Counted from the stretch's first letter, positions 6,021 to 47,185 are shown. The stretch: 64,000 bases of DNA from Ylistrum balloti (GCF_031769215.1 NW_026782173.1:2294001-2358000); one strand, 5' to 3'. Translations and numbers: made by a program. Notes: generated by a model not told the origin, from the sequence alone.

Positions 6021-7337
6021 ATGACAGTTAATCTTTACAGGAGACGTTCCTCTGGATTAGACCTAGTATCACAGGTCACTTCCATCATAATGCTGTGTAT
6101 ACTATTGCCATATTCCTATGCTGGTTCTTACAGAAATATGTCTAACCTTCACAAGGATTTACGATCAAACTACAACCGAGATATACGCCCACTGAGCAAT
6201 CAGAGTAGTTCAATAGCGATCAACATAATGTACACGCTCACATCTTTGAACGAATTTGACGCCGTAAATGGAAGGATGGTGACCACAGGGTCTCTGTACG
6301 TCACCTGGATGGATGAGATGATTACGTGGCTTCCATCAGACTACGATGACATTAAGACGATAAAGATGCGTGAAACGTTTGTATGGGCACCAACATTTGT
6401 AGTTGCCAACGGCGCCGATGATATTTATATCAAGGGAACGAAATCTGAAGATTCTACCGTTCTCTATGACAACACGGGAAAGGCTTCGCTTATTTTGAGT
6501 GGTCTCATATCTACAACATGTGACCCGGATATTACGTATTACCCTTATGACGTACATCAATGTAACCTACAGTTCACAACAAAGGAACCAATGAATGAAG
6601 TCAGTCTAAATTTTGATGCAGTATTTATATTGCCCGGTGCTGACAGTAATTTGTTTTGGAAACTCGAATATTCGGAAATGCGAGCATACAACGTTCAAAA
6701 CACAAACACTTTCATCGAGGTAACCTTTGCATTAGAGCGACGACCGACGTTTTCATTGTACAATATACTTGTTCCTGTTTGTCTATTGAATTTCGTCAAC
6801 CTCTTAGCATTTGTACTGCCGGCAGACTCTGGGGAGAGGGTGTCATTTGCCACTACGATACTACTAACAATATCCGTGTACATGACTATCATGTCGAATA
6901 GTATCCCAAACACCAGTGACCCGGTGTCCATCCTCACGATTTCTCTGATGATCAAACTCATCAACAGCAGTCTTATAGTTTTGACAGTGATCGGGACGTT
7001 AAATATATACCGCCTCAGTGACGTCACGCCAATTCCTAGTTGGCTGTCGCGCATGTTATGTTTACATAAAAACTCGATCCGTAAGATCAAAATTAGGGGC
7101 TCAAGGATTGGTCAGAAGCTTGAAATGTCAGATCTTAAAACAGAGCATTGCAGAACAAATTGTGATATTGAAGTTAAAGGAGCAACAACAATGGAGCAAA
7201 AGAAGATGCCAGATTCTTCCATCACGTGGTCAAAGGTTGGGAGATCGTTGGATTACATGTTGCTATTGGTGTTTAGTTTAGTGATAAGTATAGAAACCAT
7301 CTTCCATATGGTTCGAATAATATGTCGAAGAGGTTGA
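6021..7337 (+). CDS. R1: nicotinic-acetylcholine-receptor-like Cys-loop channel subunit (non-alpha), single coding exon
   Basis: Signal peptide ending ...SYA|GSY, WAP loop A, Cys-loop CDPDITYYPYDVHQC (C-x13-C), RRP pre-M1, PADSGERVS M1-M2 linker, four hydrophobic helices, no vicinal Cys. Start codon uncertain (6021 or 6090). AATAAA at 7557 and 7568. Confidence 0.93.
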   Translation: MTVNLYRRRSSGLDLVSQVTSIIMLCILLPYSYAGSYRNMSNLHKDLRSNYNRDIRPLSNQSSSIAINIMYTLTSLNEFDAVNGRMVTTGSLYVTWMDEMITWLPSDYDDIKTIKMRETFVWAPTFVVANGADDIYIKGTKSEDSTVLYDNTGKASLILSGLISTTCDPDITYYPYDVHQCNLQFTTKEPMNEVSLNFDAVFILPGADSNLFWKLEYSEMRAYNVQNTNTFIEVTFALERRPTFSLYNILVPVCLLNFVNLLAFVLPADSGERVSFATTILLTISVYMTIMSNSIPNTSDPVSILTISLMIKLINSSLIVLTVIGTLNIYRLSDVTPIPSWLSRMLCLHKNSIRKIKIRGSRIGQKLEMSDLKTEHCRTNCDIEVKGATTMEQKKMPDSSITWSKVGRSLDYMLLLVFSLVISIETIFHMVRIICRRG

Positions 7338-8252
7338 CTTTTTGTCTAAATTTGAAGTGAATTTATTGGAGTTACAATGTTAGAATGCTCATTACACAAT
7401 ACTGGTGTACAATTTTATTTAATGGCAAAATCTTTCCGTGCGAAATTGCCTTTTTTCTCAGTTCTGGTAATTCATATGGATGTATTTATAATTTACATGT
7501 ATCTAAAGATAATTAATTGTAATTACGAATGTTTATGATTTGAAACAATGCAGAAAAATAAATGAGGAATAAATATGTATTTATGTCATTCTTAACTTTC
7601 CAACTTTACAACTTAAAACGAAGACCTATAGTATATGCAATTTCTGTAACTTTGATTTTAGCCATGTCTGAAGGATCTGCAAGTCCTTATATATAGGTAC
7701 ATGTATGTAACAAATTGGTGTGGATACGAGGAAACATGCAACGTTGATAATCCGATAGTGTTCAATAGTTGAGTTACAGAGCTGATGGTATAACTGCCAT
7801 GTACTTACATCCTCTTGTTTGACGTCCCGTATCTACTTAATTCTAATTGACCATCCCTTGTAGACGTTTGTGATATCGTTTTGTCGTGTTTTTCCAATAT
7901 CATCATAGCACTATCCCAGTCTACTTGAAATATACCGTGCCTTGACAATGGCAGATACATTTATCCGCGAGGGGCGACAGTGTCCCGTCTTTGTCTGGCA
8001 TTGATTTTAACAAAACACGTGTGAATAAACATGTAGTATTTACAATTCAGAAAATTAAAAAAGAAACGCATGTGAAGGCGTTTTATGCCACTACACCTTT
8101 GATAAACAAAAATTACATCGAAATCAAGATAGGCAATAAGTTATTCTATATGGATTAGCAGTTTTCGATGATTTAGAATACAGCATTGTTTATCAGCACA
8201 ATAAATTAATTATAAAAAAGTCACATGTATTGAAATTCATTATTGTATACAT

Positions 8253-8570
8253 GTAGATGAAAGTATGGTTCCAGGATGAATTTGATTTCATACTTGAAGC
8301 TACTGCATCTAAAACTATTCATCAAGATAAGCTGATCAGTATCAGAATAAACAGTCCTGGGAACAATGTGACGACGGACAATTTACTTCGAGAGTATCAA
8401 ACAATTCATATCACCATGGTAATGTAGAAGTGAAATGCCGCCCCAGATACTTCATTACAATGCTCTTCCAACAAAACTCTTATTGATAGCATAGCCTACC
8501 AAGGAAATACCACTTCTCTACCATAACTTCACAGATACTGGGCAATGATATTCAGAATATTTGAAACCAA
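8253..8570 (+). mobile_element. Possible heavily decayed piggyBac-like transposase fragments
   Basis: Short motifs in different frames (VDESMVP at 8253, GNNVTTDN at ~8359, RYWAMIF at ~8533) resemble piggyBac DDD-domain motifs in the right order, but the spacing is much too short. Confidence 0.3.
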
Positions 8571-9694
8571 TGTTTGACCGGAAGCAGAATATAATTCAGT
8601 ATCAAATTAATCCAAACGTGATATTTTAATGTCTTTAGTTTTGATATGTACTTTATTGTAAAAAGGTTTTACTTAAGCAGTCAAATTTACGTGCTAAATA
8701 TGATGTTTTTTAGAACGTTTATTTGTGGACTATGTTTTGTCGGCGTAGGTGACGTCAAAATTCGTATTTCTGTGCCAACAATTCCCAATTTTTGCTGTTG
8801 TTAGGGTATCTTATAATGCTAAAAGTCATTGGCAGAATGGTGTTATAATTTTTCAAGACTCTCCGTGTAAATCGTTCTTTTGTTCCTATTTTCACTAGAT
8901 TTGAATGAGTTCGGATTATGATTATGTTGACATGTAGGTGCATTCTTCTTGTTTTTCTTTAGCTATTTTCAATACGTAACGACTCGATAAGAGCGTGACG
9001 TGCATGTTCTTATTCTGAACCGTGCTACTATTCTAATGAACATCATATATGAAAATCACATATCTCCAAATCCCACATTAAGCCGACTGGCCACAGAAAA
9101 CACTATCAAATTCTCGAAGTCATTAGTCTCTTCCGGTTACTAATTGATATAACGCGAGGCTTGTGTCTTTGAATCTATATTGTAACAGCATTAATTTTAG
9201 CGACATTGTTATATCGACAAACGATATTATAGATTTGTCTTTACAATGTGAGTTTTGTAAGCGAAGGTCCGGCGATGAGTATATAATGGTCTTCTACCTA
9301 TATACAGGTTTGACTATAAGCTTATATTTTGCTACGTCAACCTAACGATGCATTAGATACAACGTTACAAGCCAGCATAATTATTCCTGATATAGTGGTG
9401 TAAGTTAACTTCTGTAATTCATGATAAGCCATTATTGGCAAAGACGGGAACTATTTACTTTAAGAGAAATTGCTAAAAGAAAATACAATTCTGAAATGAT
9501 TTATCACTTCCACAAGCTACCAAGCCTTTTAAAGAATGTCGACAGGTTAACAGATCTACAAATACTACTTGTAATACATCATAATTTCTTATTGATTTTT
9601 TGTCATTGGAATCGGATAAGTCTACGTAGCAGCTTAACTTTGAGTCATTATCTCACGAACCACACACAGGGTAACCTGGTCAGTAAATAACTTT

Positions 9695-10990
9695 ATGATT
9701 CTTTTGAGGATTACAGTTTCAGTGCAGCAGCAGAAATATTGCATGTACATCATGAAGATTACGACCCATGACGTAAGGACAATGTTATTAATTCTGTCGA
9801 TGTTCCTCTCGAGTACATCAGCAGCGTCCTATGGCAACATGACTGGCCTCCAGTCTGACCTTCTGACGGGTTATTCTAGGAAAGTTCGCCCCTTGGAAAA
9901 CCAGGACAACGCTCTTTTTATTGTTATGATATACACTTTGAAGTCACTCAACGACTTCGACGTAGTTAATGGAAGAATGACCACCATGGGATTATTTCAT
10001 TTAGCATGGACAGATGAGAAAATGACATGGAATCCCGCTGATTATGGAAACATACAGAAGGTAGCGTTTAGGGAGTCAGATGTATGGGCTCCTATTTTCT
10101 TCATTGCTAACGGCGCGGATGACATGAACACGAGAACCTCAAGGTTTGGGGATATTTCAATATCTTTCTCCAGCTCTGGGAAGGCAGTATACTTACTAAA
10201 CGGCGTGATGACAACAACATGTGAACCGGACATCACCTATTATCCTTACGATGTCCATATGTGCTCAGTTACACTGACTACACAAGAGCTGGCCTCAGAG
10301 ATACAAGCCACGATTCTGGACATGAAGATGGAACCAGACACAAAGAATAATCTTCTTTGGAAAATAGTTGATTTTAAATACAAAAACTACGAACAGAAAA
10401 ACATATCGTTTATTGAAATATCTTTAATGATTCAGCGACGTCCAAGCTACCTGATTTTTACTATTATTCTGCCTATTTGTCTGTTAAATTTCGTGAATCT
10501 CCTAGCGTTCATTCTGCCGGCAGACTCTGGGGAGAGGGTGTCGTTCGCCATCACGGTGCTCCTAACCCTGTCCGTGTATATGACTATAATGTCGGATAGT
10601 ATACCCAACACCAGTGATCCGGTGTCCATTCTAACCACTTCTTTAATGATCAAACTTATTTACAGCGCCATGATAGTATTGACCGTTGTTTTCATTTTGA
10701 AAATTTACCACACTGATGAACGCAAGCCTATTCCACTGTGGGTTTTGCGCATAATACGATCCAGAAATAGAGTTGACAACAAAGATGAATTTGAAAAGCA
10801 AGAGGATCGTCCGACTGTCGATAAAATGAAGGACACACAAAGCATAGCACAGATCACATATACTACCTCATTTCCCACGTGGCGTTCCGTTGGCCAGGCA
10901 TTGGACAACGTATTCTTTGTGGTATTTACATGTGTAACTGTTGTCGAGATTACTTACAACCTGGTGCGCATTACGCATCGCATAGGTTGA
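9695..10990 (+). CDS. R2: nAChR-like Cys-loop channel subunit (non-alpha), single coding exon
   Basis: Signal peptide MLLILSMFLSSTSA|ASY (likely start 9752 or 9782), Cys-loop CEPDITYYPYDVHMC, PADSGERVSFAITVLLT M2, four TM helices. Confidence 0.93.
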   Translation: MILLRITVSVQQQKYCMYIMKITTHDVRTMLLILSMFLSSTSAASYGNMTGLQSDLLTGYSRKVRPLENQDNALFIVMIYTLKSLNDFDVVNGRMTTMGLFHLAWTDEKMTWNPADYGNIQKVAFRESDVWAPIFFIANGADDMNTRTSRFGDISISFSSSGKAVYLLNGVMTTTCEPDITYYPYDVHMCSVTLTTQELASEIQATILDMKMEPDTKNNLLWKIVDFKYKNYEQKNISFIEISLMIQRRPSYLIFTIILPICLLNFVNLLAFILPADSGERVSFAITVLLTLSVYMTIMSDSIPNTSDPVSILTTSLMIKLIYSAMIVLTVVFILKIYHTDERKPIPLWVLRIIRSRNRVDNKDEFEKQEDRPTVDKMKDTQSIAQITYTTSFPTWRSVGQALDNVFFVVFTCVTVVEITYNLVRITHRIG

Positions 10991-11265: not shown

Positions 11266-11736
11266 TTCCGGAACACCTGGTCGCATTATACTTTTTTTAC
11301 CTTCCAGGACACCAGGTCTTATCGTATCTTTTCCTCCCTTCCAGGACACCTGGTCTTATTGTACTTTTTCCTCCCTTCCGGAACACCTGGTCTTATTGTA
11401 CTTTTTCCTCCCTTCCAGGACACCTGGTCTTATTGTACTATTCTTCCCTTCCGGAACACCTGGTCTTATTGTACTTTTTCCTCCCTTCCAGGACACCTGG
11501 TCTTATTGTACTTTTTCCTCCCTTCCGGAACACCTGGTCTTATTGTACTTTTTCTTACCTTCCAGGACACCTTGTCTTATTGTACTTTTCCCTCCCTTCC
11601 AGGACACCTGGTCTTATTGTACTTTTTCTTCCCTTCCAGGACACCTTGTCTTATTGTACTATTCTTCCCTTCCGGAACACCTGGTCTTATTGTATTTTCT
11701 TCGCTTCCGAAACACCTGGTCTTATTGTACTTTTTT
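11266..11736. repeat. Minisatellite, ~37-bp unit (CCTTCCAGGACACCTGGTCTTATTGTACTTTTTCCTC), ~12.5 copies
   Basis: Direct tandem copies, largely alternating CCAGGA and CCGGAA variants. Explains the overlapping repetitive ORFs at 11202-11808. Confidence 0.95.
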
Positions 11737-14655: not shown

Positions 14656-14721
14656 GGAGGTATAGAACCCCGATTACTTCAAAAGTTGCAAATCAAATAA
14701 AAACAAATCATTTTACACTAG

Positions 14722-15124
14722 TTTTACCCTGACTGATCTACCTGTTGCTGATTTTATCCGGATTGATCTACCTGTTGCTAATTTTACCCGGACTGATCTA
14801 CACGTTGCTGATGATACCCGGACTGATCTACACGTTCTGATGATACCCGGATTGATCTACCTGTTGCTGATTTTACCTGGACTGATCTACATGTTGCTGA
14901 ATTTACCCGCATTGATTTACCTGTTGCTAATTTTACCTGGATTGATCTACACGTGGCTGATGATACCCGGATTGATTTACCTGTTGCTGATGATACCCGG
15001 ATTGATCTACTTGTTGCTGGTTTTACCCGGATCGATCTACATGTTGCTGATGTTACCCGGACTGATCTACCTGTTGGTGAATTTACCCGGACTGATCTAC
15101 CAGTTGCTGATTTTACCCGGATTA
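14722..15124. repeat. Minisatellite, 30-bp unit (TTTTACCCGGACTGATCTACCTGTTGCTGA), ~13 copies, degenerating to ~15270
   Basis: Direct tandem copies; produces the periodic LPGLIYLLLI ORF. Confidence 0.93.
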
Positions 15125-15623: not shown

Positions 15624-15871
15624 NNNNNNNNNNNNNNNNNNNNNNNNNNNNNNNNNNNNNNNNNNNNNNNNNNNNNNNNNNNNNNNNNNNNNNNNNNNNN
15701 NNNNNNNNNNNNNNNNNNNNNNNNNNNNNNNNNNNNNNNNNNNNNNNNNNNNNNNNNNNNNNNNNNNNNNNNNNNNNNNNNNNNNNNNNNNNNNNNNNNN
15801 NNNNNNNNNNNNNNNNNNNNNNNNNNNNNNNNNNNNNNNNNNNNNNNNNNNNNNNNNNNNNNNNNNNNNNN
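15624..15871. other. Assembly gap (run of N)
   Basis: About 248 consecutive N. Confidence 0.99.
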
Positions 15872-15889
15872 AACGCTGGTGATTATAAG

Positions 15890-16845
15890 AATCACAGACA
15901 GCTGTTGGTTACCATCGCATTTTTCTGTATTGTGCTGTCGTGTGCGGAAGCCATGTCGTACAATCGAGATCTGCACCATTACAGAATCAGTTTGATATAC
16001 TAAGACTCAACGTTAAAGTCTCTGAACGACTTTAACGCCATACATGGAAGGATGATGACGTCATGGTCTCTATATATAACTATAAGGATGAAAAGATAAC
16101 GTGACTTCCATCAGACTCTGATGACATGATGACTTTGAGGATGTGCTAAAATGCTGTGTGGCGCCGACAGTTTAAATTCTGAATGGTGCTGATGATATCT
16201 TTATCAAGATAACGAAAAATGAGCGTTCGTCTGTTTTGTATAAAAACACAGATATGGTTTCTTTTGTTGTAAATGGTATGATGACTATATATCATGAGAC
16301 CCGGATGTTACATTTTACCCTTATGACGTACATCAGTGTAACCTACAGTTTACAACACCAGAACACATCGATGAGATCAGTCTTAATTTTTGATATATCA
16401 ATAATATCTGAGGCTGAAATTAATTTGTTGTGGAAATTAATTGGTTATATTCACATGATTAACTGCTTTAGAGACAAGACTACAGTCATCGAAAAAGGTT
16501 TTTACAATAGAACGTCGTCCAACGTACTTGATATACACAAGTCTCCTTCCCGTTTTGCCTGCTAAATTTCATCAACTGGAAACTACAAGCATTTATTCTG
16601 CCGGCAAACTCTGGTGATAAGGCATCATTCGCCACCACTATACTACTAACATATCCTTGTATATGACTGTAATGTCTGATAGTATCCCGAACACCAGTGA
16701 TCCGGTTAATGTCGGATAGTATCCCGAACACCAGTGATCCGGTTAATGTCTGATAGAGTTTATATTGATATCGGTATTTGCATCCATAATCGTTATAGAA
16801 ACAGCATACAATATTGTTAGATTAACCAATCGCATGGGAGGATAA
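15890..16845 (+). pseudogene. psi-R1-like receptor pseudogene (stops, frameshifts, M3 and intracellular loop deleted)
   Basis: Fragments LLVTIAFFCIVLSCAEAMSY, STLKSLNDFNAIHGRMMT, NGADDIFIK, DPDVTFYPYDVHQCNLQFTTPE, ERRPTYLIY and SDSIPNTSDPV, a 37-bp tandem duplication (16678-16750), then directly M4 (FASIIVIETAYNIVRLTNRMGG*, stop 16843-16845). DNA of the extracellular part is closest to R1. Confidence 0.9.
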
Positions 16846-17313: not shown

Positions 17314-19807
17314 TACCTGAGTGACTCAGGGACTACCAGTGTACTTTCATAGTGTTTCGGAACTGAACTACTGAGTACACGATACCTGAGTGACTCAGTT
17401 ACTAGCTGTGTACTGCCATAGTGTTCCGGAACTGAACCACCGCCGAGAACACGATACCTGAGTGACTCAGGGACTAACTGTGTACTGTCATAGTGTTCTG
17501 GAACTGAACCACTGAGAACGCGATACCTGAGTGACTCAGGGACTAACTGTGTACTGTCATAGTGTTCCGGAACTGAACCACCACTGAGAACGCGATACCT
17601 GAGTGACTCAGGGACTAACTGTGTACTGTCATAGTGTTCTGGAACTGAACCACTGAGAACGCGATACCTGAGTGACTCAGTTACTAGCTGTGTACTGCCA
17701 TAGTGTTCCGGAACTGAACCACCGCCGAGAACACGATACCTGAGTGACTCAGGGACTAACTGTGTACTGTCATAGTGTTCTGGAACTGAACCACTGAGAA
17801 CGCGATACCTGAGTGACTCAGGGACTAACTGTGTACTGTCATAGTGTTCTGGAACTGAACCACTGAGAACGCGATACCTGAGTGACTCAGGGACTAACTG
17901 TGTACTGTCATAGTGTTCCGGAACTGAACCACCACTGAGAACACGATACCTGAGTGACTCAGGGACTAACAGTGTACTGCCATAGTGTTTCGGAACTGAA
18001 CCACCACTGAGAACACGATAACCGAATGACTCAGGGTCTAACAGTGTACTTTCATAGTGTTTCGGAACTGAACTACTGAGTACACGATACCTGAGTGACT
18101 CAGTTACTAGCTGTGTACTGCCATAGTGTTCCGGAACTGAACCACCACTGAGAACACGATACCTGAGTGACTCAGTTACTAGCTGTGTACTGCCGTAGTG
18201 TTCCGGAACTGAACCACCACTGAGAACACGATACCTGAGTGACTCAGGGACTAGCAGTGTACTGCCATAGTGTTCCGGAACTGAACCACCGCCGAGAACA
18301 CGATACCTGAGTGACTCAGGGACTAACTGTGTACTGTCATAGTGTTCTGGAACTGAACCACTGAGAACGCGATACCTGAGTGACTCAGGGACTAACTGTG
18401 TACTGTCATAGTGTTCCGGAACTGAACCACCACTGAGAACACGATACCTGAGTGACTCAGGGACTAACAGTGTACTGCCATAGTGTTTCGGAACTGAACC
18501 ACCACTGAGAACACGATAACCGAATGACTCAGGGTCTAACAGTGTACTTTCATAGTGTTTCGGAACTGAACCACCACTGAGAACACGATAACCGAGTGAC
18601 TCAGGGACTAACTGTGTACTGTCATAGTGTTCCGGAACTGAACCACCACTGAGAACACGATACCTGAGTGACTCAGGGACTAACTGTGTACTGTCATAGT
18701 GTTCTGGAACTGTACTACTGAGAACACGATACCTGAGTGGCTCAGGGACTAACTGTGTACTGTCATAGTGTTCCGGTACTGTACTACTGAGAACACGATA
18801 CCTGAGTGACTCAGGGACTAACTGTGTACTGTCATAGTGTTCTGGAACTGAACCACCACTGAGAACACGATACCTGAGTGACTCAGGGACTAACTGTGTA
18901 CTGTCATAGTGTTCTGGAACTGTACTACTGAGAACACGATACCTGAGTGACTCAGGGACTAACTGTGTACTGTCATAGTGTTCCGGAACTGAACCACCAC
19001 TGAGAACACGATACCTGAGTGACTCAGGGACTAACTGTGTACTGTCATAGTGTTTCGGAACTGAACCACCACTGAGAACACGATACCTGAGTGACTCAGG
19101 GACTAACTGTGTAGTGTCATAGTGTTTCGGAACTGAACCACCACTGAGAACACGATACCTGAGTGACTCAGGGACTAACTGTGTACTGTCATAGTGTTTC
19201 GGAACTGAACCACCACTGAGAACACGATACCTGAGTGACTCAGGGACTAACTGTGTACTGTCATAGTGTTCTGGAACTGAACCACCACTGAGAACACGAT
19301 ACCTGAGTGACTCAGGGACTAACTGTGTACTGTCATAGTGTTTCGGAACTGAACCACCACTGAGAACACGATACCTGAGTGACTCAGGGACTAACTGTGT
19401 ACTGTCATAGTGTTCCGGAACTGAACCACCACTGAGAACACGATACCTGAGTGACTCAGGGACTAACTGTGTAGTGTCATAGTGTTTTGGAACTGAACCA
19501 CCACTGAGAACACGATAACCGAATGACTCAGGGTCTAACAGTGTACTTTCATAGTGTTTCGGAACTGAACCACCACTGAGAACACGATAACCGAGTGACT
19601 CAGGGACTAACTGTGTACTGCCATAGTGTTCCGGAACTGAACCACCACTGAGAACACGATACCTGAGTGACTCAGGGTCTAACAGTGTACTTTCATAGTG
19701 TTTCGGAACTGAACCACCACTGAGAACACGATAACCGAGTGACTCAGGGACTAACTGTGTACTGTCATAGTGTTCTGGAACTGTACTACTGAGAACACGA
19801 TACCTGA
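17314..19807. repeat. Tandem array, 69-72-bp unit, ~35 copies, each with the palindrome CCTGAGTGACTCAGG
   Basis: Unit TACCTGAGTGACTCAGGGACTAACTGTGTACTGTCATAGTGTTCCGGAACTGAACCACCACTGAGAACACGA. The array ends 17 bp before the R3 ATG. Confidence 0.97.
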
Positions 19808-19824: not shown

Positions 19825-21009
19825 ATGGACTCCTTAAACATGGAGGTTTACACCCGGATAATCATGCTTTCTATCCTCACTGTGAGTACCCATGCTGGAT
19901 CGTATGACGAAATGATAAGACTGCAAACAAATCTACTCGCGAACTATTCTAAATATATACGTCCTATACAAAATCAGGATGACGCGATGAATGTTTCCGT
20001 TATTTACTCGTTGACATATTTCCATGACTTTGACGCAGTGGCAGGTAAAATAACGGTGCTTGCATCTTTATATCTCCAGTGGAAGGATGAAAAGTTGTAC
20101 TGGAATCCAACCAATTATGGCAATATACAAAATGCATATTTTAATAATTCACAAGTGTGGACTCCTGTTGTTGCTTTAGCTAGTGGTATCGACAACTTAT
20201 TCATTCCAGTAACATCATCTATCACTGTTCAGCATTATGGATATGCTTCAGCTGTTGCTGCTGACGTCATAACATCAGTTTGTACACCTGATATCACCTA
20301 CTACCCATACGACACTCACAACTGCACAATAATGTTTGTTTCTATGGAAATTTATACTTTGATTCGTTTTCAGTCTGGAGTTATAGATATTGAATATCCT
20401 GATAATTTATTCTGGAAGATAACCAGAAAGGGATTTCGGGATTATATTAACAACAACTATACCTCTGGTATAGAAATAACTTACACTTTAGAGCGACGGC
20501 CGACATATGTGGTATATACAATCGTGCTTCCAGTGTCCATGCTGAATTTTGCTATTCTTCTTGTTTTTGTTCTGCCAGCAGATTCCGGGGAAAGAGTGTC
20601 GTTCGCTACTACCATGCTTTTAACCTTGACAATGTATATGACCATAATGTCGGACAGTATCCCTAACACCAGTGACCCAGTGTCCATTTTCACGGTTTCA
20701 CTGATGGTAAAACTCATTATCAGCGCCTTAATAGTGTTGTCAGTAATTATAACTCTGTGTGTGTATAAGGCCAATGAGAACAAAGCGATACCGCTGTGGT
20801 TGTTGTACTGCTGTAAACTAAGACGACCACGGGTAGATGTTGCGGATGAACAGACAGAGGAGAAAGACGACGTTAAATCTTACACGAAGGTGACTGTCGC
20901 CAACTGGCATTCTATAGGGAAGCGTTTGGATTTCATCTTCTTTGTATTGTTTGGCTTAACGATGGTTACGGAGACTTTAGTAAATATCCTAAGAATTACA
21001 TATCACTGA
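19825..21009 (+). CDS. R3: nAChR-like Cys-loop channel subunit (non-alpha), single coding exon
   Basis: Signal peptide ...VSTHA|GSY, WTP loop A, Cys-loop CTPDITYYPYDTHNC, PADSGERVSFATTMLLT M2, very short M3-M4 loop. Confidence 0.94.
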   Translation: MDSLNMEVYTRIIMLSILTVSTHAGSYDEMIRLQTNLLANYSKYIRPIQNQDDAMNVSVIYSLTYFHDFDAVAGKITVLASLYLQWKDEKLYWNPTNYGNIQNAYFNNSQVWTPVVALASGIDNLFIPVTSSITVQHYGYASAVAADVITSVCTPDITYYPYDTHNCTIMFVSMEIYTLIRFQSGVIDIEYPDNLFWKITRKGFRDYINNNYTSGIEITYTLERRPTYVVYTIVLPVSMLNFAILLVFVLPADSGERVSFATTMLLTLTMYMTIMSDSIPNTSDPVSIFTVSLMVKLIISALIVLSVIITLCVYKANENKAIPLWLLYCCKLRRPRVDVADEQTEEKDDVKSYTKVTVANWHSIGKRLDFIFFVLFGLTMVTETLVNILRITYH

Positions 21010-23974: not shown

Positions 23975-25132
23975 ATGCAAGCCCATATCCGGACAATTCT
24001 TTCATGTCTTCTCTTTGTGTGCATACATTCTGGATCCTATGACGAAATGGCATCTCTTCATAACGCCCTTTTGTCAAACTACTCCAAGAATATACGCCCT
24101 ATACAAAACCAGGACAGCGCGATGAGCATTATATTTGTGTTCACTATGCCTTATTTCCGTGAATTCGACGCTATAACGGGAGAGTTCACTATAATGGCGT
24201 CTATATACCTTGGTTGGATGGATGAAAAATTAAACTGGGATCCTACCGATTATGGCAATATCCATACATCCTATTTCTCCGCCTTTCAGGTGTGGACACC
24301 ATATCTTGCGTTAAGTAGTTCTGTAAACAATCAATTAATTACAGCTACGTCTTTAGTCACTGTTGAAAGCACCGGGTATTCGTCTGCTCTTTACTCCAAA
24401 ATAGTCACTTCAGCATGTTCACCAGATATTACTTATTACCCGTATGATGTCCACAACTGCAGTCTTTATTTTACAATGATGGAGCCCTACACGATTATCG
24501 ACTTGAAACTTTACCCGCAGGATAACTACATTGAAAACACTGACAATTTATTTTGGATTTTATCCAGAACAGGTATGAAGAAGTATATTTCTAAAAACTA
24601 CACTTCAACTATAAAAATAACATATTCACTAGAACGGCGACCTACATACTTGTTGTACACTATAATGCTGCCAGTTTGCTTGTTGAATTTCGTTACCCTC
24701 CTGGCGTTTGTTCTGCCAGCAGATTCCGGGGAAAGAGTGTCGTTCGCTACTACCATGCTTTTAACGTTGACAATGTATATGACTATAATGTCGGACAGTA
24801 TCCCTAACACCAGTGACCCAGTGTCAATTTTCACGGTTTCACTGATGGTAAAACTCATTATCAGCGCTCTAATAGTGTTGTCAGTGATCCTTACTCTGTG
24901 TGTCTACAATACCAGTGAGGATAAACACATCCCTAAATGGTTGCTTTTCTGCTGCAAACTGAGGTCAGGACGAGTAGACGTCGATGACAATTTGAAATCT
25001 CCCGCAAAAAGGACAGTTGTCTCCTGGAAATGTATAGGAAAACGGTTTGATGTAGTTTTCATTATTTTGTATTCCATAGTGACTGTTACCGAGACAGTTG
25101 TGAACGTTGTAAGAATTTCATATCGTCTTTGA
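23975..25132 (+). CDS. R4: nAChR-like Cys-loop channel subunit (non-alpha), single coding exon
   Basis: ATG at 23975 (MQAHIRTILSCLLFVCIHS|GSY), Cys-loop CSPDITYYPYDVHNC, PADSGERVS, four TM helices. Confidence 0.94.
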   Translation: MQAHIRTILSCLLFVCIHSGSYDEMASLHNALLSNYSKNIRPIQNQDSAMSIIFVFTMPYFREFDAITGEFTIMASIYLGWMDEKLNWDPTDYGNIHTSYFSAFQVWTPYLALSSSVNNQLITATSLVTVESTGYSSALYSKIVTSACSPDITYYPYDVHNCSLYFTMMEPYTIIDLKLYPQDNYIENTDNLFWILSRTGMKKYISKNYTSTIKITYSLERRPTYLLYTIMLPVCLLNFVTLLAFVLPADSGERVSFATTMLLTLTMYMTIMSDSIPNTSDPVSIFTVSLMVKLIISALIVLSVILTLCVYNTSEDKHIPKWLLFCCKLRSGRVDVDDNLKSPAKRTVVSWKCIGKRFDVVFIILYSIVTVTETVVNVVRISYRL

Positions 25133-29580: not shown

Positions 29581-30756
29581 ATGAAGTTTCACATCTTGAC
29601 GATTGTAGCACATCTCTGCTTTTTATGCACACATGCTGGATCCTATGACGAAATGGTATCACTGCATAATGATCTTTTGGCAAGCTACTCCAGTACCATA
29701 CGCCCTATACAGAATCAGGATGATGTTTTGAGTATAACTTTCGTATACACTCTGCCGTATTTTCGTGAATTCGACGCGGTCAGTGGGAAATTTACGGCAT
29801 TAGTGTCAATAAGCCTCAGTTGGAATGACCAAAAATTAAACTGGAATCCTGCAAGTTATGGAAATATTCATTCATCTTATTTCTCTTCCTCTCAGGTGTG
29901 GACACCATATCTTTTCTTATCAAACGCAGTAGACATTGGATTAATCCCAGTTTCATCGTCTGTCACTGTTTACAGTTCTGGATTTTCATTTGCGCTTTTC
30001 TCTAAAGTGGTGACCTCAACATGTTCACCTGATATCACTTACTATCCGTATGATATTCACAAATGTACTCTTGTGTTTACAATGTCTGAACCTTACACTG
30101 TTGTCGATCTAAATCTGAATCCACAGGGTGACATCTTTGAAAATACAGATAATCTGTTCTGGATAGTATCACGAAAAGGACTCCAGAAATTTATTTCTAA
30201 TAACTATACATCATTCATAGAAATAGCATACTCACTAGAGCGGCGACCAACATACTTGTTGTACACTATAATGCTGCCAGTTTGCTTGTTGAATTTCGTT
30301 ACCCTCCTGGCGTTTGTTCTGCCAGCAGATTCCGGGGAAAGAGTGTCGTTCGCTACTACCATGCTTTTAACCTTGACAATGTATATGACCATAATGTCGG
30401 ACAGTATCCCTAATACCAGTGACCCAGTGTCCATTTTCACGGTTTCACTGATGGTAAAACTCATTATCAGCGCTCTAATAGTGTTGTCGGTAATCATAAC
30501 TCTGTGTGTGTATCATACTAATGAGGACAAGCCAATCTCTAAATGGTTACTATTTTGCTGTAAACTGAAGTCAGGACAAAAAGAGACGGGAAAGAACGAT
30601 GCTGTTGATGATACGTTTAACATCTCTGATGAAGTAACAGCGGCTTCCTGGAAATCTGTAGGACAACGTTTGGATGTACTTTTCTTTATTTTGTATTTCG
30701 TCTTGATTGTTACTGAGACTTTGGTAAATGTGGTGAGAATTTCTTACCGACTTTAG
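29581..30756 (+). CDS. R5: nAChR-like Cys-loop channel subunit (non-alpha), single coding exon
   Basis: ATG at 29581 (MKFHILTIVAHLCFLCTHA|GSY), Cys-loop CSPDITYYPYDIHKC, PADSGERVS, four TM helices. Confidence 0.94.
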   Translation: MKFHILTIVAHLCFLCTHAGSYDEMVSLHNDLLASYSSTIRPIQNQDDVLSITFVYTLPYFREFDAVSGKFTALVSISLSWNDQKLNWNPASYGNIHSSYFSSSQVWTPYLFLSNAVDIGLIPVSSSVTVYSSGFSFALFSKVVTSTCSPDITYYPYDIHKCTLVFTMSEPYTVVDLNLNPQGDIFENTDNLFWIVSRKGLQKFISNNYTSFIEIAYSLERRPTYLLYTIMLPVCLLNFVTLLAFVLPADSGERVSFATTMLLTLTMYMTIMSDSIPNTSDPVSIFTVSLMVKLIISALIVLSVIITLCVYHTNEDKPISKWLLFCCKLKSGQKETGKNDAVDDTFNISDEVTAASWKSVGQRLDVLFFILYFVLIVTETLVNVVRISYRL

Positions 30757-34239: not shown

Positions 34240-34647
34240 ATGCTTATCATGGCAGGTCAAATTGGGACAATCATAAGGCTCCTCTTCTTCATAAACGTAC
34301 ATGCCGGATGACAACATTGCATCACTGCATACAAACCTCCTGTCAAATTACTCACGGTAAATGCTTCCTCTGCAAAATCAGGACGCGGCGATCAGTATAG
34401 GTTTTACGTACTACTCCATGCCATATTTTCATGAATTCGACGCTGTAAGTGGAATGTTTACAGTATTAATGTCAGTTTACCTGGGTTGGGAGGACGAAAA
34501 ATTAAACTGGATTTTATATTTTTAACGCGTGTTGCTTACTGGCAATATATCTGGAAACAATTAGATTTATCTTTCGTTATTTTGTATTATGTCGTAACAT
34601 TTATTGAAACTGTTGCTAGCTTTGTTAGAATTATGTACCGTCTATAA
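34240..34647 (+). pseudogene. psi-R4/R6-like receptor remnant with a large internal deletion
   Basis: MLIMAGQIGTIIRLLFFINVHAG*, a frameshift, NIASLHTNLLSNYSR*MLPLQNQDAAISI...MPYFHEFDAVSGMF...YLGWEDEKLNW, joined at ~34511-34525 directly to M4 (WQYIWKQLDLSFVILYYVVTFIETVASFVRIMYRL*). Confidence 0.88.
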
Positions 34648-38355: not shown

Positions 38356-39534
38356 ATGATGAAGAAACTTACCATAGCAATATTGGTGTGTCTCTTTGCG
38401 AGCTCATATGCTGGATCCTACGATAACATGGCGACACTGCACACGGACCTTCTGTCGAACAACTACTCACGATACATACGTCCTGTACAAAACCAAGATG
38501 ACGCAATAAGTGTAACATCAATTTTTTCAATGCCGTATTTTCGTGACTTCAACGCTGTCACCGGAACTTTCACTTTAATGGCATCTGTATACGTCGGTTG
38601 GTTGGATGCAAAATTAAACTGGAATCCTGCCAATTATGGGAATATTCAACTATCTTATTTTTCTGCGTCTCAGGTATGGACTCCAAATATTGTCATAGCA
38701 AGTAGCGTAGAAAGTGATGCTCTCTCACCCACATCTTCAGTAACCGTTACAAGTTCTGGGTATTCTTTTGCTCTCTATACTAAAATAGTGACATCAGCGT
38801 GTTCACCGGATATTACTTATTACCCATATGATGTTCACAGCTGCAATGTTTCTTTGGCATTGTGGGAACCATTTACAGTTATGGACTTGAATCTCAGTCC
38901 CCAGGGGGAATACTTTGACTTTACCGACAACTTATTTTGGATTGTATCCAGAAAAGGGGAACGGAAGTATATTTCTAGCAACTACACTTCAGTTATAGAT
39001 ATAACGTACTCAATAGAACGGCGACCTACCTATTTGATATATACTATCATGCTTCCTGTTTGCCTGTTGAATTTCGTTACCCTCCTGGCGTTTGTTCTGC
39101 CTGCAGATTCCGGGGAAAGAGTGTCGTTCGCTACTACCATGCTTTTAACCTTGACAATGTACATGACTATAATGTCGGACAGTATCCCTAACACCAGTGA
39201 CCCAGTGTCCATTTTCACGGTTTCACTGATGGTAAAACTCATTATCAGCGCCTTAATAGTGTTGTCAGTAATTATAACTCTGTGTATCTACCATACCAGT
39301 GAGGATAAACCCATTCCTAAATGGTTGCTTTTCTGCTGCAAACTGAAGCCAGGACAAGTGGAGGCAGAAAAGAATGAGGTTGTTGAAAATGTGTACAAAT
39401 CGCAGAACATTGGGACGGTTGCTACCTGGCAAGCTATAGGGAAACGTTTGGATGTAGCTTTCTTTATATTGTTCTTTGTTTGTACTCTTACGGAGACTCT
39501 TGTAAATGTAGTAAGAATTACCTACCGTCTATAA
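38356..39534 (+). CDS. R6: nAChR-like Cys-loop channel subunit (non-alpha), single coding exon
   Basis: ATG at 38356 (MMKKLTIAILVCLFASSYA|GSY), Cys-loop CSPDITYYPYDVHSC, PADSGERVS, four TM helices, AATAAA at 39569. Confidence 0.94.
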   Translation: MMKKLTIAILVCLFASSYAGSYDNMATLHTDLLSNNYSRYIRPVQNQDDAISVTSIFSMPYFRDFNAVTGTFTLMASVYVGWLDAKLNWNPANYGNIQLSYFSASQVWTPNIVIASSVESDALSPTSSVTVTSSGYSFALYTKIVTSACSPDITYYPYDVHSCNVSLALWEPFTVMDLNLSPQGEYFDFTDNLFWIVSRKGERKYISSNYTSVIDITYSIERRPTYLIYTIMLPVCLLNFVTLLAFVLPADSGERVSFATTMLLTLTMYMTIMSDSIPNTSDPVSIFTVSLMVKLIISALIVLSVIITLCIYHTSEDKPIPKWLLFCCKLKPGQVEAEKNEVVENVYKSQNIGTVATWQAIGKRLDVAFFILFFVCTLTETLVNVVRITYRL

Positions 39535-44144: not shown

Positions 44145-44177
44145 AATAGTCTGTAGCGGATCATAAAGGACGGTAAT

Positions 44178-44407
44178 CAGGGGCGTAGCAAGCCCAGCAG
44201 AAATGTGTAAGCCCATTCGAGGGGTCTGAATTTCATGATTTCAAAGATGTTTGGAATCGTTTTCTGAGACAGTTTCTTTTTTATTTAACTTCAACCCTTG
44301 GTATCTATTTTCAACCTTAATTTTGTAATTTTGTCCCACATACTCTATGCACGGATTTTTTTATGTGTAAGCCCGGGCTTTTTCTTTCTATGGAAGCTAC
44401 GCCCCTG
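44178..44407. mobile_element. MITE with 12-bp perfect TIRs (CAGGGGCGTAGC) and 5-bp flanking direct repeat GTAAT
   Basis: TIRs at 44178-44189 and 44396-44407; GTAAT at 44173-44177 and 44408-44412; no coding capacity. Confidence 0.8.
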
Positions 44408-44419
44408 GTAATTGTCTGT

Positions 44420-44600
44420 AATATTGAGACGGATCTCACAAGTGAATGTAGATATCACTGGGTTATCAATCGCATTGGTTATGGGCGGGTTATTGTCACT
44501 CATTGGTCATATTGAGACGGATCTCACAAGTGACCAACAAAATCACAGTGTTATCAATCTTGCTGGTTATGGGCGTCTTGTCGTCTGTCATTGGTCATAT
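44420..44600. repeat. ~88-bp tandem duplication (2 diverged copies)
   Basis: ATATTGAGACGGATCTCACAAGTGA and GGTTATGGGCG...CATTGGTCATAT each occur twice about 88 bp apart. Confidence 0.75.
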
Positions 44601-45889
44601 TTGGATGGTTTTAATGAACTATTGCCTGTAATGTAATAATCAGCATTTGTGTTGGCAATAGGAAAGTTTTAAGTATTGACATGTCGTGAATGTGAAAGAA
44701 ACAATTTGTAACTATTCACATTCATAGGTAGGTCATTTTCCTGAATGTTTTTTTTCACATCCTGATGATGACGCACGGCTAATCTATGATGTATATAACA
44801 ATATCTGAATTCAAATTCCAAGAGAACACATCATGATAAGTGGATTGCCTTTCAAATTCACACACCTTGGGAATGATATGTGACTGAAAGATGGGTACAT
44901 TGTTAGCAAACCTGTATGGCGATGATATCAAAGTTGACATGCCCAATTTAATGATTAGAAAATGCGTCGTGGTGTTATAATGATTGTAGTGAACTTGAAT
45001 TGACTAAAGAGAGGTAAATCAAACATCTGGGAAGCATATGGGTTGTTATCGACAGAATCAACTTCTACTTGAGAGTATCATAATGCTGCAATCATGAACT
45101 TGAATGACAGGCCTTATTGAACACATACTTTGGTCAACCACAACGATCACTTTGATTTCTACAGAAAGGCAATTAACTTCGTATTAATTACTGATCATCT
45201 CTAAATTAAACTTCTCATGTACTCTGTCTTATGTAACCTGCATGCCATGTTTTGATTCTCTCAAACTGTAGCATGGATCATAATATACACATGTACTTTA
45301 CGTTCGTTTAGTATCATTCAATATTGAAATTTATGGAATGTATTGAATATTGTGGCTAATGACCTCCTGAATAACTTTTGCCCTTATCATCACTGACGAG
45401 AAGCACCACATTGAATATAACATTACGTTAGTCTACGTTATCTCAGGTGAACTCTCTGTGTGACGATTTTCGTTTCTCATGAAACTGAGAAGCGAATCGG
45501 TCTCTGCTTTTTTGGTTGTGTAATTGGCAACTACATTGATATTCCATCTCTTGAAAAATGAGTATGTTCACGGGTTGGCGATAAACCATTCACTTCACTG
45601 TAAATAAAATGAAACTTCTCTATTCATTGTCAACATTCTGTGTTGAAGCTCGTGGAAATTAATCTAAATCTCCACTTTATAAGTGTTTACCCGTGACAAA
45701 AGGACTATGTTTTCCACTTGTAAATCTATTGATATCTACTTTACTGCAACGCACACAACAAAACAGTGACATCAGGCGGGGACACATAAAGTTATTCTGT
45801 AGGTGTGTCAAACCGTTTTATTGATGTGTTTTTACATCAGCTTACGTATATCAATCAAGATTGTGTAAGGCAGATGAGGTACGTTTTGT

Positions 45890-45910
45890 TTTCCATACTG
45901 TTCTTTCTAG
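45890..45910 (+). other. Probable splice acceptor of a 5'-UTR intron of R7
   Basis: Polypyrimidine tract ending ...TTCTTTCTAG| 18 nt upstream of the ATG at 45929. Confidence 0.55.
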
Positions 45911-45928
45911 GTAACAACATAGTAACTA

Positions 45929-47185
45929 ATGGCAATGATTAACAGGGTGGTAACACTGTGTTGCATCGCATCCTTTACATCTGCGGCTTCATACAGCCAG
46001 GTACGGGATCTGTACAACAGTCTCCTTATCAACTACACCAGCAATATCAGGCCAGTGTTAGATCAGACCAAAGCTATCAATGTTGACATCGACGTTATGC
46101 TCCACAGCATTAACTTGTTTGATGAAGTTTCTGGTAAACTTTCTATGTCAGGCATCTTCAGATTTTCCTGGACGGACGAATTGCTGCAATGGAACCCGAT
46201 GTCGGCTAACGGTATATCCTCTATGATGTTTACTACGTCACAGGTATGGGTACCAAATGTTTTTATCGGCAACGGCGTGGATCAAACAAATATCTTCAAA
46301 CCAAGCGACTCCATCGAAATATCCTACACTCGAGAAGGCAGCGCCTCTTTACGATTTTTCCAAATTTTCGATGTTGTTTGTCAGGCTGGTATGACGTATT
46401 ACCCAAACGACATTCACACATGTAAAATCGAAATGGCACAAATGACAAATCTGGATCTAGTGAATCTCACTTCTTCGAAGGGGATCATACTGACCGCATA
46501 CTATTCCAACCTCATTTGGAATGTCGAGTCCACTACAATGGAAAATGTAATCGTTGGAAGGCAGTCTAAGGCGATGTTCTATATTACAATAGGTCGGCGA
46601 CCGACCTTTATTTTTCTTACTCTTGTATTACCGATTATTGCCTTAAATTATGTGAATCTCCTTGTGTTCTTCATACCGACCGACTCGGGGGAGAGGATAT
46701 CCTACTCCATCACAGTACTGCTGACCTTCACTGTTTATCTGTCAGTGTACTCAGACAAGGTACCACCACTAAGTCTACCAATAGGTATCTTCAGCGTGTC
46801 CATGCTCATCAAGCTGTTCACTAGCTGTCTCATATCGCTTTCCTGTATCGTCATCTCGAGGATAAGCTACTATCAAGAAGATTATCCAGTTCCTTCTACA
46901 TTGCAGAAACTAACTGCAAGCTTTCGTCGGAACAGAAAGATACGAAGCTCCCTGAAAACACCAGCACGCCAAAACTCGACTGTTGATGTTGTGGAAACTA
47001 TGTGCAACACTCGTGAGGCTGAAACTCTCTCTCGGGATGAAAATCGTTCTCAGCCCTCTACTCCTGTGACGGTAGTCTGGAAGGAAGTTGTTGACTTCTT
47101 GGACAAACTGTGTCTTGTGTTATTCACACTGACGTCTACAGTTGAAACAGTTGTGTGTTTAATCCTCATAATAACTCGTCATTGA
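45929..47185 (+). CDS. R7: most divergent nAChR-like Cys-loop channel subunit (non-alpha), single coding exon
   Basis: Signal peptide MAMINRVVTLCCIASFTSA|ASY, WVPNVFIGNG, Cys-loop CQAGMTYYPNDIHTC, PTDSGERISYSITVLLT M2, four TM helices. Confidence 0.93.
   Translation: MAMINRVVTLCCIASFTSAASYSQVRDLYNSLLINYTSNIRPVLDQTKAINVDIDVMLHSINLFDEVSGKLSMSGIFRFSWTDELLQWNPMSANGISSMMFTTSQVWVPNVFIGNGVDQTNIFKPSDSIEISYTREGSASLRFFQIFDVVCQAGMTYYPNDIHTCKIEMAQMTNLDLVNLTSSKGIILTAYYSNLIWNVESTTMENVIVGRQSKAMFYITIGRRPTFIFLTLVLPIIALNYVNLLVFFIPTDSGERISYSITVLLTFTVYLSVYSDKVPPLSLPIGIFSVSMLIKLFTSCLISLSCIVISRISYYQEDYPVPSTLQKLTASFRRNRKIRSSLKTPARQNSTVDVVETMCNTREAETLSRDENRSQPSTPVTVVWKEVVDFLDKLCLVLFTLTSTVETVVCLILIITRH

What the first reader, a model, noticed from the sequence alone, without database searches (positions are those of the whole stretch)
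6021..47185. Array of 7 intact + 2 dead intronless, acetylcholine-site-deficient Cys-loop channels: candidate ionotropic chemoreceptor repertoire
Seen: nine same-strand copies in 41 kb, each with an uninterrupted CDS, signal peptide, C-x13-C Cys-loop and four TM helices. By manual alignment to the alpha7 nAChR pattern, all seven lack the loop C vicinal Cys-Cys, the loop A Tyr (WxPD..LY becomes WAPTFVVA, WTPYLALS etc.) and the loop D Trp (S, L or I instead), and six of seven lack the loop B Trp. Established: these residues form the ACh aromatic box. Cephalopod chemotactile receptors are tandem, intronless nAChR derivatives that lost this site and sense other ligands, and large nAChR expansions including intronless genes are known in bivalves, mostly without ligands. 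Inference: this locus encodes a diversifying family of non-cholinergic sensors, possibly for environmental chemicals, that may co-assemble combinatorially.
Basis: partly seen in the sequence, partly recalled or inferred. Interest (0 to 1): 0.85.

Follow-up and report, generated by a model that had tools for sequence, protein, structure and literature searches.

The report
Scallop orphan nicotinic-type channel gene array
Seven intact and two dead single-exon genes for nicotinic-receptor-like ion channel subunits that lack the usual acetylcholine pocket lie in a row in a scallop genome. They belong to a bivalve-wide gene expansion already described, and a chemosensory role is still untested.

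Summary
The + strand carries seven complete single-ORF Cys-loop subunit genes. Two decayed copies lie at about 15914-16845 and 34310-34644. The N gap (15624-15871) touches only the 5' end of the first dead copy.

All seven lack the loop A Tyr, the loop D Trp and the loop C Cys-Cys. Six of seven lack the loop B Trp. All keep the Cys-loop and a cation-type pore (-1' Glu, 9' Leu).

None of this is special to the locus. Among 144 sequences (the copies plus their nearest relatives) none has those three features, while the pore is conserved. The relatives with a source name are all bivalve.

The array is old. Argopecten irradians has a syntenic intronless array, and c1 and c2 have orthologues in other scallops. 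The ligand-binding domains are under purifying selection (pN/pS about 0.3).

One extra detail: the TM1-TM3 pore block of c3-c6 is homogenised by gene conversion. Synonymous divergence there is 0.18-0.57 within the species but 1.3-1.5 between species.

The kind is already published (Jiao 2019). This scan noted at least eight similar arrays elsewhere in the same genome. The copies are not specially close to octopus chemotactile receptors. The chemoreceptor reading stays a hypothesis, because no expression or ligand data could be obtained.

The parts
6021..7337 (+). c1: intact single-ORF nAChR-like subunit, 438 aa
   Evidence: ORF. Pfam LBD 7e-29 and TM region 2e-13. Groups with Argopecten and Mizuhopecten orthologues with 98-100% support. 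An identical gene model is on record (P0007).
9695..10990 (+). c2: intact single-ORF subunit, 431 aa from the first ATG; the likely start is the ATG at 9752 or 9782
   Evidence: ORF. Pfam. Sister to a Pecten maximus protein with 100% support. The public gene model P0008 starts at an internal Met and lacks the signal peptide.
15624..15871 (.). Assembly gap (N run, 248 letters, length only estimated)
   Evidence: No receptor homology to its left. It borders only remnant A.
15914..16845 (+). Remnant A: dead c1/c2-like copy
   Evidence: tblastn matches in three frames, with 20 in-frame stops in the longest match. The stretch between the TM2-TM3 linker motif and TM4 is deleted, and the SDSIPNTSDP motif is duplicated.
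19825..21009 (+). c3: intact single-ORF subunit, 394 aa
   Evidence: Its LBD is sister to Argopecten AiE, but its pore block groups with c4-c6. A 72-bp satellite ends 18 bases before its ATG.
20566..20760 (+). Gene-conversion tract in c3 (TM2 to TM3)
   Evidence: Identical runs of 101 nt with c5 and 117 nt with c6; 0 of 2000 permutations reach these lengths.
23975..25132 (+). c4: intact single-ORF subunit, 385 aa
   Evidence: Aligns to alpha7 at E 3e-36.
24644..24901 (+). Homogenised pore block in c4 (end of TM1 to TM3)
   Evidence: A 122-nt run identical with c5. Nucleotide identity is 96-100% in the windows over alignment columns 256-330 (c4-c5), against 62-82% in the LBD. dS for c4-c5 is 0.175 here against 1.33 in the LBD.
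29581..30756 (+). c5: intact single-ORF subunit, 391 aa
30250..30507 (+). Homogenised pore block in c5
34310..34644 (+). Remnant B: deletion derivative of a c4/c6-like copy
   Evidence: 67 LBD codons (63% identical to c4) with an in-frame stop, then a frame change, then 38 TM4 codons.
38356..39534 (+). c6: intact single-ORF subunit, 392 aa; the only copy that keeps the loop B Trp
   Evidence: AlphaFold model pLDDT 91.2. Foldseek best matches are nAChR subunits with TM-score about 0.8. The public model P0001 lacks the signal peptide.
39028..39285 (+). Homogenised pore block in c6
45929..47185 (+). c7: intact single-ORF subunit, 418 aa; the most divergent copy (30% identity to c4) and a separate deep lineage

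Best explanation
This is an old pectinid tandem array within the published bivalve-wide expansion of intronless nicotinic-receptor-like genes. The seven intact genes encode full-length Cys-loop subunits with a working-looking gating and cation-pore apparatus. Neither face of the subunit carries the canonical acetylcholine-binding residues, so pentamers built only from these subunits cannot hold a classical ACh site. Most likely they form cation channels gated by some other, unknown ligand; this step is inferred. Whether that ligand is environmental or internal is open.

The array grew by tandem duplication. Five lineages are present: c1, c2, c3, c4-c6 and c7. At least the c1, c2 and c3-c6 lineages have counterparts in other scallops, and only c4-c6 are possibly recent duplicates. 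Two copies have decayed.

In c3-c6, interlocus gene conversion keeps the TM1-TM3 pore block nearly identical while the ligand-binding domains stay distinct.
For: Domains, fold and pore: Pfam LBD plus TM region in all seven. The best solved relatives are alpha7 and other nAChR subunits. The AlphaFold model has pLDDT 91 and matches nAChR subunits at TM-score about 0.8. The Cys-loop C-x13-C with a YPYD motif, the -1' Glu, the 9' Leu and the 20' Asp are kept.

Site loss: loop A Tyr, loop D Trp and loop C Cys-Cys are absent in 7 of 7 copies, and loop B Trp in 6 of 7. Clade-wide, among 144 sequences, 0 keep the loop D Trp, 0 the loop A Tyr, 0 the Cys-Cys and 64 the loop B Trp. By contrast 141 keep the -1' Glu and 144 the 9' Leu.

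Constraint and age: LBD pN/pS is 0.28-0.47 and pore-block pN/pS is 0.05-0.23. A syntenic array of five intact intronless genes lies in Argopecten irradians. Orthologue groupings have 100% support. The nearest relatives that carry a source name are all bivalves: Mizuhopecten, Tegillarca, Mactra, Argopecten and Pecten.

Gene conversion: within the species, pore-block dS is 0.18-0.57 against 1.0 to saturated in the LBD. Identical runs reach 101-122 nt, with 0 of 2000 permutations matching. Between species, pore-block dS is 1.3-1.5, so the low value is not a low local mutation rate. Pore-block identity is 87-97% within a species and 76-83% between species, whereas LBD identity is about the same within and between. 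c3's LBD pairs with AiE but its pore block pairs with c4-c6.

Literature: Jiao et al. 2019 (PMC6896357) report 99-217 nAChR genes in bivalves, many intronless and in tandem arrays of up to 12, with binding sites often not conserved.
Against: No expression, ligand or assembly data exist for these genes. Exact-sequence look-ups returned only the genome assembly. The loop B, C and F alignments to alpha7 are less certain than those of loops A and D. An aromatic residue aligned to Tyr188 is kept in six copies and c6 keeps the loop B Trp, so weak or atypical binding of a cationic ligand is not excluded. dS in the LBD is near saturation, so the ratios are rough. Bootstrap support for the discordant placement of c3 is moderate (54-79%).
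Confidence: 0.8

Rival explanations
1. The array is an ionotropic chemoreceptor repertoire for environmental chemicals, working like cephalopod chemotactile receptors: variable ligand-binding domains on a common pore, possibly co-assembling in combinations.
For: The genes share with CRs a single ORF, a tandem layout, the loss of the ACh aromatic box and a short cytoplasmic loop. Binding loops are somewhat more variable than the rest of the LBD. The pore block is kept uniform by gene conversion while the LBDs differ, which suits subunit mixing. The idea that divergent molluscan nAChR clades serve ionotropic chemosensation is raised in PMC13174522.
Against: There are no tissue or ligand data. 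Whole-LBD selection is purifying and the array is old, with stable orthologues. The profile scores alpha7 above CRT1. The same site loss holds for all 144 sequences examined (copies plus nearest relatives), and that family's published expression is broad, covering gill, gonad, embryo and stress or immune responses (PMC6896357). The orphan annelid relative Alpo4 resisted ligand screens (PMC10338036).
Confidence: 0.2
2. The genes encode accessory or structural subunits that join canonical alpha subunits in ACh-gated heteromers, as vertebrate beta1 or beta3-type subunits do. They would tune conductance, trafficking or pharmacology without contributing a binding site.
For: The pore and gating elements are strongly conserved while both binding faces are degenerate. 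Non-alpha subunits without site residues are normal parts of nAChRs (established knowledge of muscle and neuronal receptors). Purifying selection fits this role.
Against: Very many such subunits exist. There are 14394 cluster representatives in the wider family at E up to 0.001, and at least eight other such arrays were noted in this genome (unchecked notes). That is hard to reconcile with a purely structural role. The LBDs are distinct yet conserved across species, which suggests that the LBD itself matters.
Confidence: 0.15
3. The genes are silent or decaying retrogene copies with no function.
For: Two of the nine copies are dead. Jiao 2019 reports that more intron-poor than intron-rich nAChR genes have little or no expression. 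A satellite abuts the start of c3.
Against: Seven ORFs of 385-438 codons are intact. pN/pS is well below 1. Orthologues are intact in other scallops. The dead copies show what neutral decay looks like here.
Confidence: 0.04

Closest known systems
Bivalve intronless tandem nAChR expansion (Jiao et al. 2019, BMC Genomics, PMC6896357)
   Same: A bivalve host, LBD plus TM-region architecture, single-exon genes, same-strand tandem arrays of up to 12 genes, decayed members, and frequent non-conservation of the ACh-binding residues.
   Different: This particular pectinid array and its residue pattern are not described in that paper. That paper also does not report domain-restricted gene conversion of the pore block.
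Cephalopod chemotactile receptors (CRT1, CRB1; PDB 8eis, 9e6b)
   Same: Derived from nAChRs, intronless, tandemly arrayed, ACh site lost, short cytoplasmic loop, about 380-420 aa.
   Different: The profile of the array scores CRT1 at 148 bits, below alpha7 (184), muscle alpha (173) and 5-HT3A (163). All nearest relatives that carry a source name are bivalve. Sensory expression and gating by hydrophobic ligands are shown for CRs and unknown here. A formal tree with CR sequences could not be built here.
Human alpha7 nAChR
   Same: The best solved sequence relative (E 3e-36 for c4, 2.5e-53 for the profile). Same fold. The Cys-loop, -1' Glu and 9' Leu are shared.
   Different: The scallop copies lack Tyr93, Trp55 and Cys190-Cys191, and six of seven lack Trp149. 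The Asp of the WxPD motif is replaced. The M3-M4 loop is far shorter.
Alpo4, orphan nAChR-like receptor of Alvinella pompejana (PMC10338036)
   Same: A lophotrochozoan orphan Cys-loop subunit without the loop C Cys-Cys. It is not gated by ACh or serotonin, and its ligand is unknown despite screening.
   Different: Alpo4 keeps the key aromatic binding residues, according to that paper. The scallop copies have lost most of them.
Region-restricted gene conversion in clustered receptor families (for example protocadherin clusters; recalled from memory, not checked here)
   Same: A constant module is homogenised among tandem paralogues while the recognition module stays diverse.
   Different: A different protein family. 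No adaptive role is shown here. Conversion may simply persist where purifying selection keeps the identity high enough.

Membership tests
Cys-loop pentameric ligand-gated ion channels, cationic nAChR/5-HT3 branch | Neur_chan_LBD followed by Neur_chan_memb, above the Pfam cut-offs | tested here: met
   All seven copies: LBD 95-106 bits (cut-off 26), TM region 46-68 bits (cut-off 28.1).
Cys-loop pentameric ligand-gated ion channels, cationic nAChR/5-HT3 branch | Cys-loop of two Cys separated by 13 residues | tested here: met
   C148 and C162 of c4 are invariant in all seven copies and in all 146 rows of the wider alignment.
Cys-loop pentameric ligand-gated ion channels, cationic nAChR/5-HT3 branch | Four transmembrane helices and the subunit fold | tested here: met
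   The AlphaFold model of c6 has pLDDT 91.2 with helices at 224-246, 254-276, 286-312 and 358-389. Foldseek TM-score is about 0.8 to nAChR subunits.
Cys-loop pentameric ligand-gated ion channels, cationic nAChR/5-HT3 branch | Cation-type M2 (-1' Glu, 9' Leu gate) | tested here: met
   The SGER...LLTL motif is present in all seven copies. Among 144 sequences, 141 have the -1' Glu and 144 the 9' Leu.
Acetylcholine-gated nicotinic receptor (functional ACh site) | Principal face: loop A Tyr, loop B Trp, and loop C Tyr-x-Cys-Cys with a second Tyr | tested here: not met
   Loop A Tyr is absent in 7 of 7, loop B Trp in 6 of 7, and the Cys-Cys in 7 of 7. An aromatic residue aligned to Tyr188 is kept in 6 of 7.
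Acetylcholine-gated nicotinic receptor (functional ACh site) | Complementary face: loop D Trp | tested here: not met
   Replaced by S, L or I in all seven copies. The column lies 5 residues from an invariant Trp, so the alignment is firm there.
Acetylcholine-gated nicotinic receptor (functional ACh site) | Current evoked by ACh | not testable with these tools
   Needs electrophysiology.
Bivalve intronless tandem nAChR expansion (Jiao 2019) | Bivalve genome; coding sequence in one exon; same-strand tandem array | tested here: met
   Scallop relatives. The ORFs run from signal peptide to TM4. Nine copies lie on the + strand within 41 kb. Introns in the 5' UTR cannot be excluded.
Cephalopod chemotactile receptor clade | Phylogenetic placement inside the CR clade | tested here: inconclusive
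   No tree with CR sequences could be built. As a proxy, the array profile scores CRT1 at 148 bits, below alpha7 at 184 bits, and the nearest named relatives are all bivalve. PMC13174522 places a separate 'CR-like' clade partly in bivalves; whether this array belongs to it is unknown.
Cephalopod chemotactile receptor clade | Expression in sensory epithelium and gating by poorly soluble natural products | not testable with these tools
   No transcript or tissue data were retrievable.

The most novel reading that the evidence does not exclude
The array, and the large bivalve clade it belongs to, is a convergent counterpart of cephalopod chemotactile receptors. It would be a modular ionotropic sensor family. 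Gene conversion would hold one pore module constant, so that subunits with different ligand-binding domains can co-assemble and read out non-cholinergic, possibly environmental, ligands.
Probability: 0.15. Interest if true: 0.75.

Novelty: new member of a known kind. Interest (0 to 1): 0.3.

Why it matters
Bivalves carry 100-200 nicotinic-type genes, and almost none has a known ligand. This locus is a clean, compact example for testing what such orphans do. It offers seven intact paralogues with orthologues in other scallops. All lack the ACh pocket and all keep an intact cation pore. Four of them share one pore block.

If some of these respond to environmental chemicals, chemotactile-type sensing would not be a cephalopod invention. 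It would be a wider molluscan use of this fold.

The pore-restricted gene conversion is a small but concrete addition. I found no report of it for molluscan nAChR-like arrays in the held library. It also warns that whole-gene trees of these arrays mix two histories.

Otherwise the finding is ordinary for a bivalve genome.

Tried and rejected
1. Transcript evidence. Exact-protein look-ups for c4 and c1 returned nothing, or only the genome assembly. Transcription and tissue therefore remain unknown.

2. A formal phylogeny with octopus CRs and canonical subunits. The word-indexed protein search reached only scallop and a few unnamed relatives (24 hits). The exhaustive search returns unnamed nearest relatives only. 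PDB chains cannot be passed to the tree tools by reference. I used profile scores against solved structures as a proxy instead.

3. Positive selection. Whole-domain Nei-Gojobori ratios are well below 1. Site models were not run, because no codeml or HyPhy was available and dS is near saturation. The loop-versus-scaffold variability test is weak evidence only.

4. Low synonymous rate as the cause of the uniform pore block. Rejected, because between-species dS there is 1.3-1.5.

5. Duplication units that include flanking DNA. Self-BLAST shows that similarity among copies is confined to the coding sequence. No shared promoters or retroposition scars can be read.

6. Rfam and tRNA scans of the window found nothing.

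7. The expression table of Jiao 2019 covers oyster and pearl oyster only, so it cannot be mapped onto this array.

Full report
**What is in the sequence**

A stop-to-stop ORF scan finds seven long + strand ORFs between 6021 and 47185. Their translations are mutually alignable over their whole length.
- c1: 6021-7337
- c2: 9695-10990
- c3: 19825-21009
- c4: 23975-25132
- c5: 29581-30756
- c6: 38356-39534
- c7: 45929-47185

Each hits Pfam Neur_chan_LBD and Neur_chan_memb above the curated cut-offs. Each begins with a hydrophobic stretch that ends in A/S-G/A-S just before a conserved Ser-Tyr, and each ends with a hydrophobic TM4. The two Cys of the Cys-loop are 13 residues apart and invariant.

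An AlphaFold model of c6, built on a 100-sequence alignment, has mean pLDDT 91.2. It shows the expected beta-sandwich followed by four long helices. Only the short M3-M4 loop has low confidence. Its best Foldseek matches are muscle, alpha7 and alpha4beta2 nAChR subunits at TM-score about 0.8. So each coding sequence is complete in a single ORF. Introns in untranslated regions cannot be excluded.

**The dead copies and the gap**

tblastn with the seven proteins finds two more places.

Remnant A runs from about 15914 to 16845. It is most like c1 and c2 and needs all three frames. The longest match carries 20 in-frame stops. The stretch between the TM2-TM3 linker motif and TM4 is lost, and a short motif is duplicated.

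Remnant B (34310-34644) keeps 67 N-terminal LBD codons, 63% identical to c4 and with a stop. After a frame change they are joined to 38 TM4 codons.

The N run 15624-15871 ends 42 bases before the signal-peptide-like start of remnant A. Nothing left of the gap resembles a receptor. The gap therefore affects none of the intact genes. At most it hides the first codons of a copy that is dead in any case. I did not try to fill it.

**The acetylcholine site**

HMMER aligns c4 to human alpha7 over residues 21-323 at E 3e-36. I read that alignment together with the MAFFT alignment of the copies. In the order c1 to c7:
- loop D Trp55 is S, L, S, S, S, S, I
- loop A Tyr93 is A, A, A, S, S, A, G
- the Asp of the WxPD motif is T, I, V, Y, Y, N, N
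- loop B Trp149 is K, Q, M, M, S, W, M
- no copy has adjacent Cys residues in loop C.

Two nuances apply. An aromatic residue aligned with loop C Tyr188 is kept in six copies, and c6 keeps the loop B Trp. The loop B, C and F alignments are also less secure than those of loops A and D, which sit a few residues from invariant Trp residues.

The pore, by contrast, is canonical for a cation channel. The -1' Glu, 0' Arg, 9' Leu and 20' Asp are all present, and the Cys-loop carries a YPYD version of the FPFD motif.

**How special is this?**

It is not special. An exhaustive HMMER scan with a profile of the seven copies finds 14394 cluster representatives at E up to 0.001. Behind a few close relatives there is a long plateau of 400-450-residue proteins.

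I aligned the seven copies with the nearest single-domain representatives, 144 sequences in all.
- None has the loop D Trp, the loop A Tyr or a loop C Cys-Cys.
- 64 keep the loop B Trp.
- 141 keep the -1' Glu and all 144 keep the 9' Leu.

The relatives that carry a source name are all bivalves: Mizuhopecten, Argopecten, Pecten, Tegillarca and Mactra. The loss of the ACh site is therefore an old, clade-wide property of a large bivalve family, not a feature of this locus.

This family has been published. Jiao et al. 2019 (PMC6896357) report 99-217 nAChR genes in five bivalves, 138 of them in the scallop M. yessoensis. Many are intronless and lie in tandem arrays of up to 12. The binding residues are often not conserved, and expression is broad. 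A 2026 preprint (PMC13174522) resolves molluscan clades with altered binding residues, and a 'CR-like' clade that includes bivalves. It raises the chemosensory idea without testing it. Notes of this scan list at least eight similar arrays elsewhere in the same genome, two of them already followed up with the same verdict. These are unchecked leads, consistent with the published gene counts.

**Age and selection**

Argopecten irradians has a syntenic array on CM084268.1 (26.58-26.63 Mb). It holds five intact single-ORF genes in the stretches I fetched, plus a remnant.

In a maximum-likelihood tree:
- c1 groups with Argopecten and Mizuhopecten proteins
- c2 groups with a Pecten maximus protein
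- c3-c6 group with the Argopecten genes AiA-AiE, each grouping with 100% support
- c7 is a separate deep lineage.

So the array is an old pectinid cluster of several lineages, and only c4-c6 are possibly younger duplicates.

By the Nei-Gojobori method, LBD pN/pS is 0.28-0.47 and pore-block pN/pS is 0.05-0.23. LBD synonymous sites are near saturation, so the ratios are rough. They are clearly below 1, and the two dead copies show what unconstrained decay looks like here. The six binding loops are somewhat more variable than the rest of the LBD (mean pairwise difference 0.525 against 0.398, one-sided Mann-Whitney p 0.006). That is expected for surface loops and does not show positive selection.

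**A mosaic history**

Among c3-c6, nucleotide identity is 92-100% in the windows spanning alignment columns 271-330 (TM2 to TM3). The tract extends back to the end of TM1 (about column 256) for c4-c5. In the LBD the same pairs are 48-82% identical. Identical runs reach 101-122 nt, and none of 2000 permutations reaches these lengths.

Synonymous divergence in the block is 0.18-0.57, against 1.0 to saturated in the LBD of the same pairs. The same block has dS 1.3-1.5 between c4-c6 and Argopecten AiA, so the low within-species value is not a slow local mutation rate.

Pore identity is 87-97% within each species and 76-83% between them, while LBD identity is about equal within and between. The LBD of c3 pairs with AiE, but its pore block pairs with c4-c6, with moderate support. 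In Argopecten, the recent duplicates AiC and AiD differ more in the pore block (dS 0.21) than in the LBD (dS 0.05).

Together these results show interlocus gene conversion limited to the pore block, in both lineages. Whether it is selected, for instance to keep subunits able to co-assemble, is open. It may simply persist where purifying selection keeps the identity high. A search of the held library found no report of this for molluscan nAChR-like arrays.

**Relation to cephalopod chemotactile receptors**

The array shares with CRs a single ORF, a tandem layout, the lost ACh site and a short cytoplasmic loop.

The array profile scores alpha7 at 184 bits, muscle alpha at 173, 5-HT3A at 163 and octopus CRT1 at 148. 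All named near relatives are bivalve. Any functional likeness would therefore be convergent. I could not build a tree that includes CR sequences.

**Verdict**

On the interpretation:
- The statement that these subunits cannot form a classical ACh site is right.
- The description as a diversifying family is overstated.
- The assignment of a chemosensory role is untested.

The best reading is orphan cation-channel subunits of a known bivalve expansion, gated by an unknown non-classical ligand. The accessory-subunit and chemoreceptor readings remain live alternatives. The pore-restricted gene conversion is the only element that goes beyond what is published.

Noticed in passing
window 17314-19807: A 72-bp satellite of 35 copies (91% matches) ends 18 bases before the ATG of c3. 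Because 72 is a multiple of 3, it gives a spurious 834-codon open frame on the minus strand. Any promoter or 5' UTR of c3 would lie inside the satellite.
   Followed up: partly
window 3477-5718: A 19-bp tandem repeat of about 119 copies (78% matches) ends about 300 bases upstream of c1.
   Followed up: no
window 11266-11736 and 14722-15123: Two more tandem arrays between c2 and the gap, with periods of 37/74 bp and 30 bp. The first produces several overlapping spurious ORFs of 176-214 codons.
   Followed up: no
window 1-2172, minus strand: A retrotransposon remnant. A 539-aa ORF (553-2172) has weak SCAN and Retrotrans_gag matches. An ORF that looks integrase-like by eye (not searched) runs off the left edge of the window (1-448).
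   Followed up: partly
L001 16363-17532 and 19182-20357 (Argopecten irradians): The recent duplicates AiC and AiD are 98% identical in LBD DNA but only 96% in the pore block (dS 0.05 against 0.21). This is the reverse of the usual pattern and suggests that one copy received a conversion tract from another paralogue.
   Followed up: partly
L002 12676-13074 (Argopecten irradians): A receptor remnant (TM3 to TM4 part only) lies just downstream of the intact gene AiE, so the Argopecten array also carries dead copies.
   Followed up: no
window 9695-10990 and 38356-39534: The public gene models for c2 (P0008, 383 aa) and c6 (P0001, 368 aa) start at internal Met codons and lack the signal peptide. 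No gene with exactly the 385-aa product read here for c4 is on record. The array is incompletely annotated in the source assembly.
   Followed up: partly
window 6816-6844 and 10514-10542: c1 and c2 share a 29-nt identical run in TM2 (0 of 2000 permutations reach it), although their pore-block dS is about 1.3. This may be an old or very short conversion, or strong codon-level constraint.
   Followed up: no
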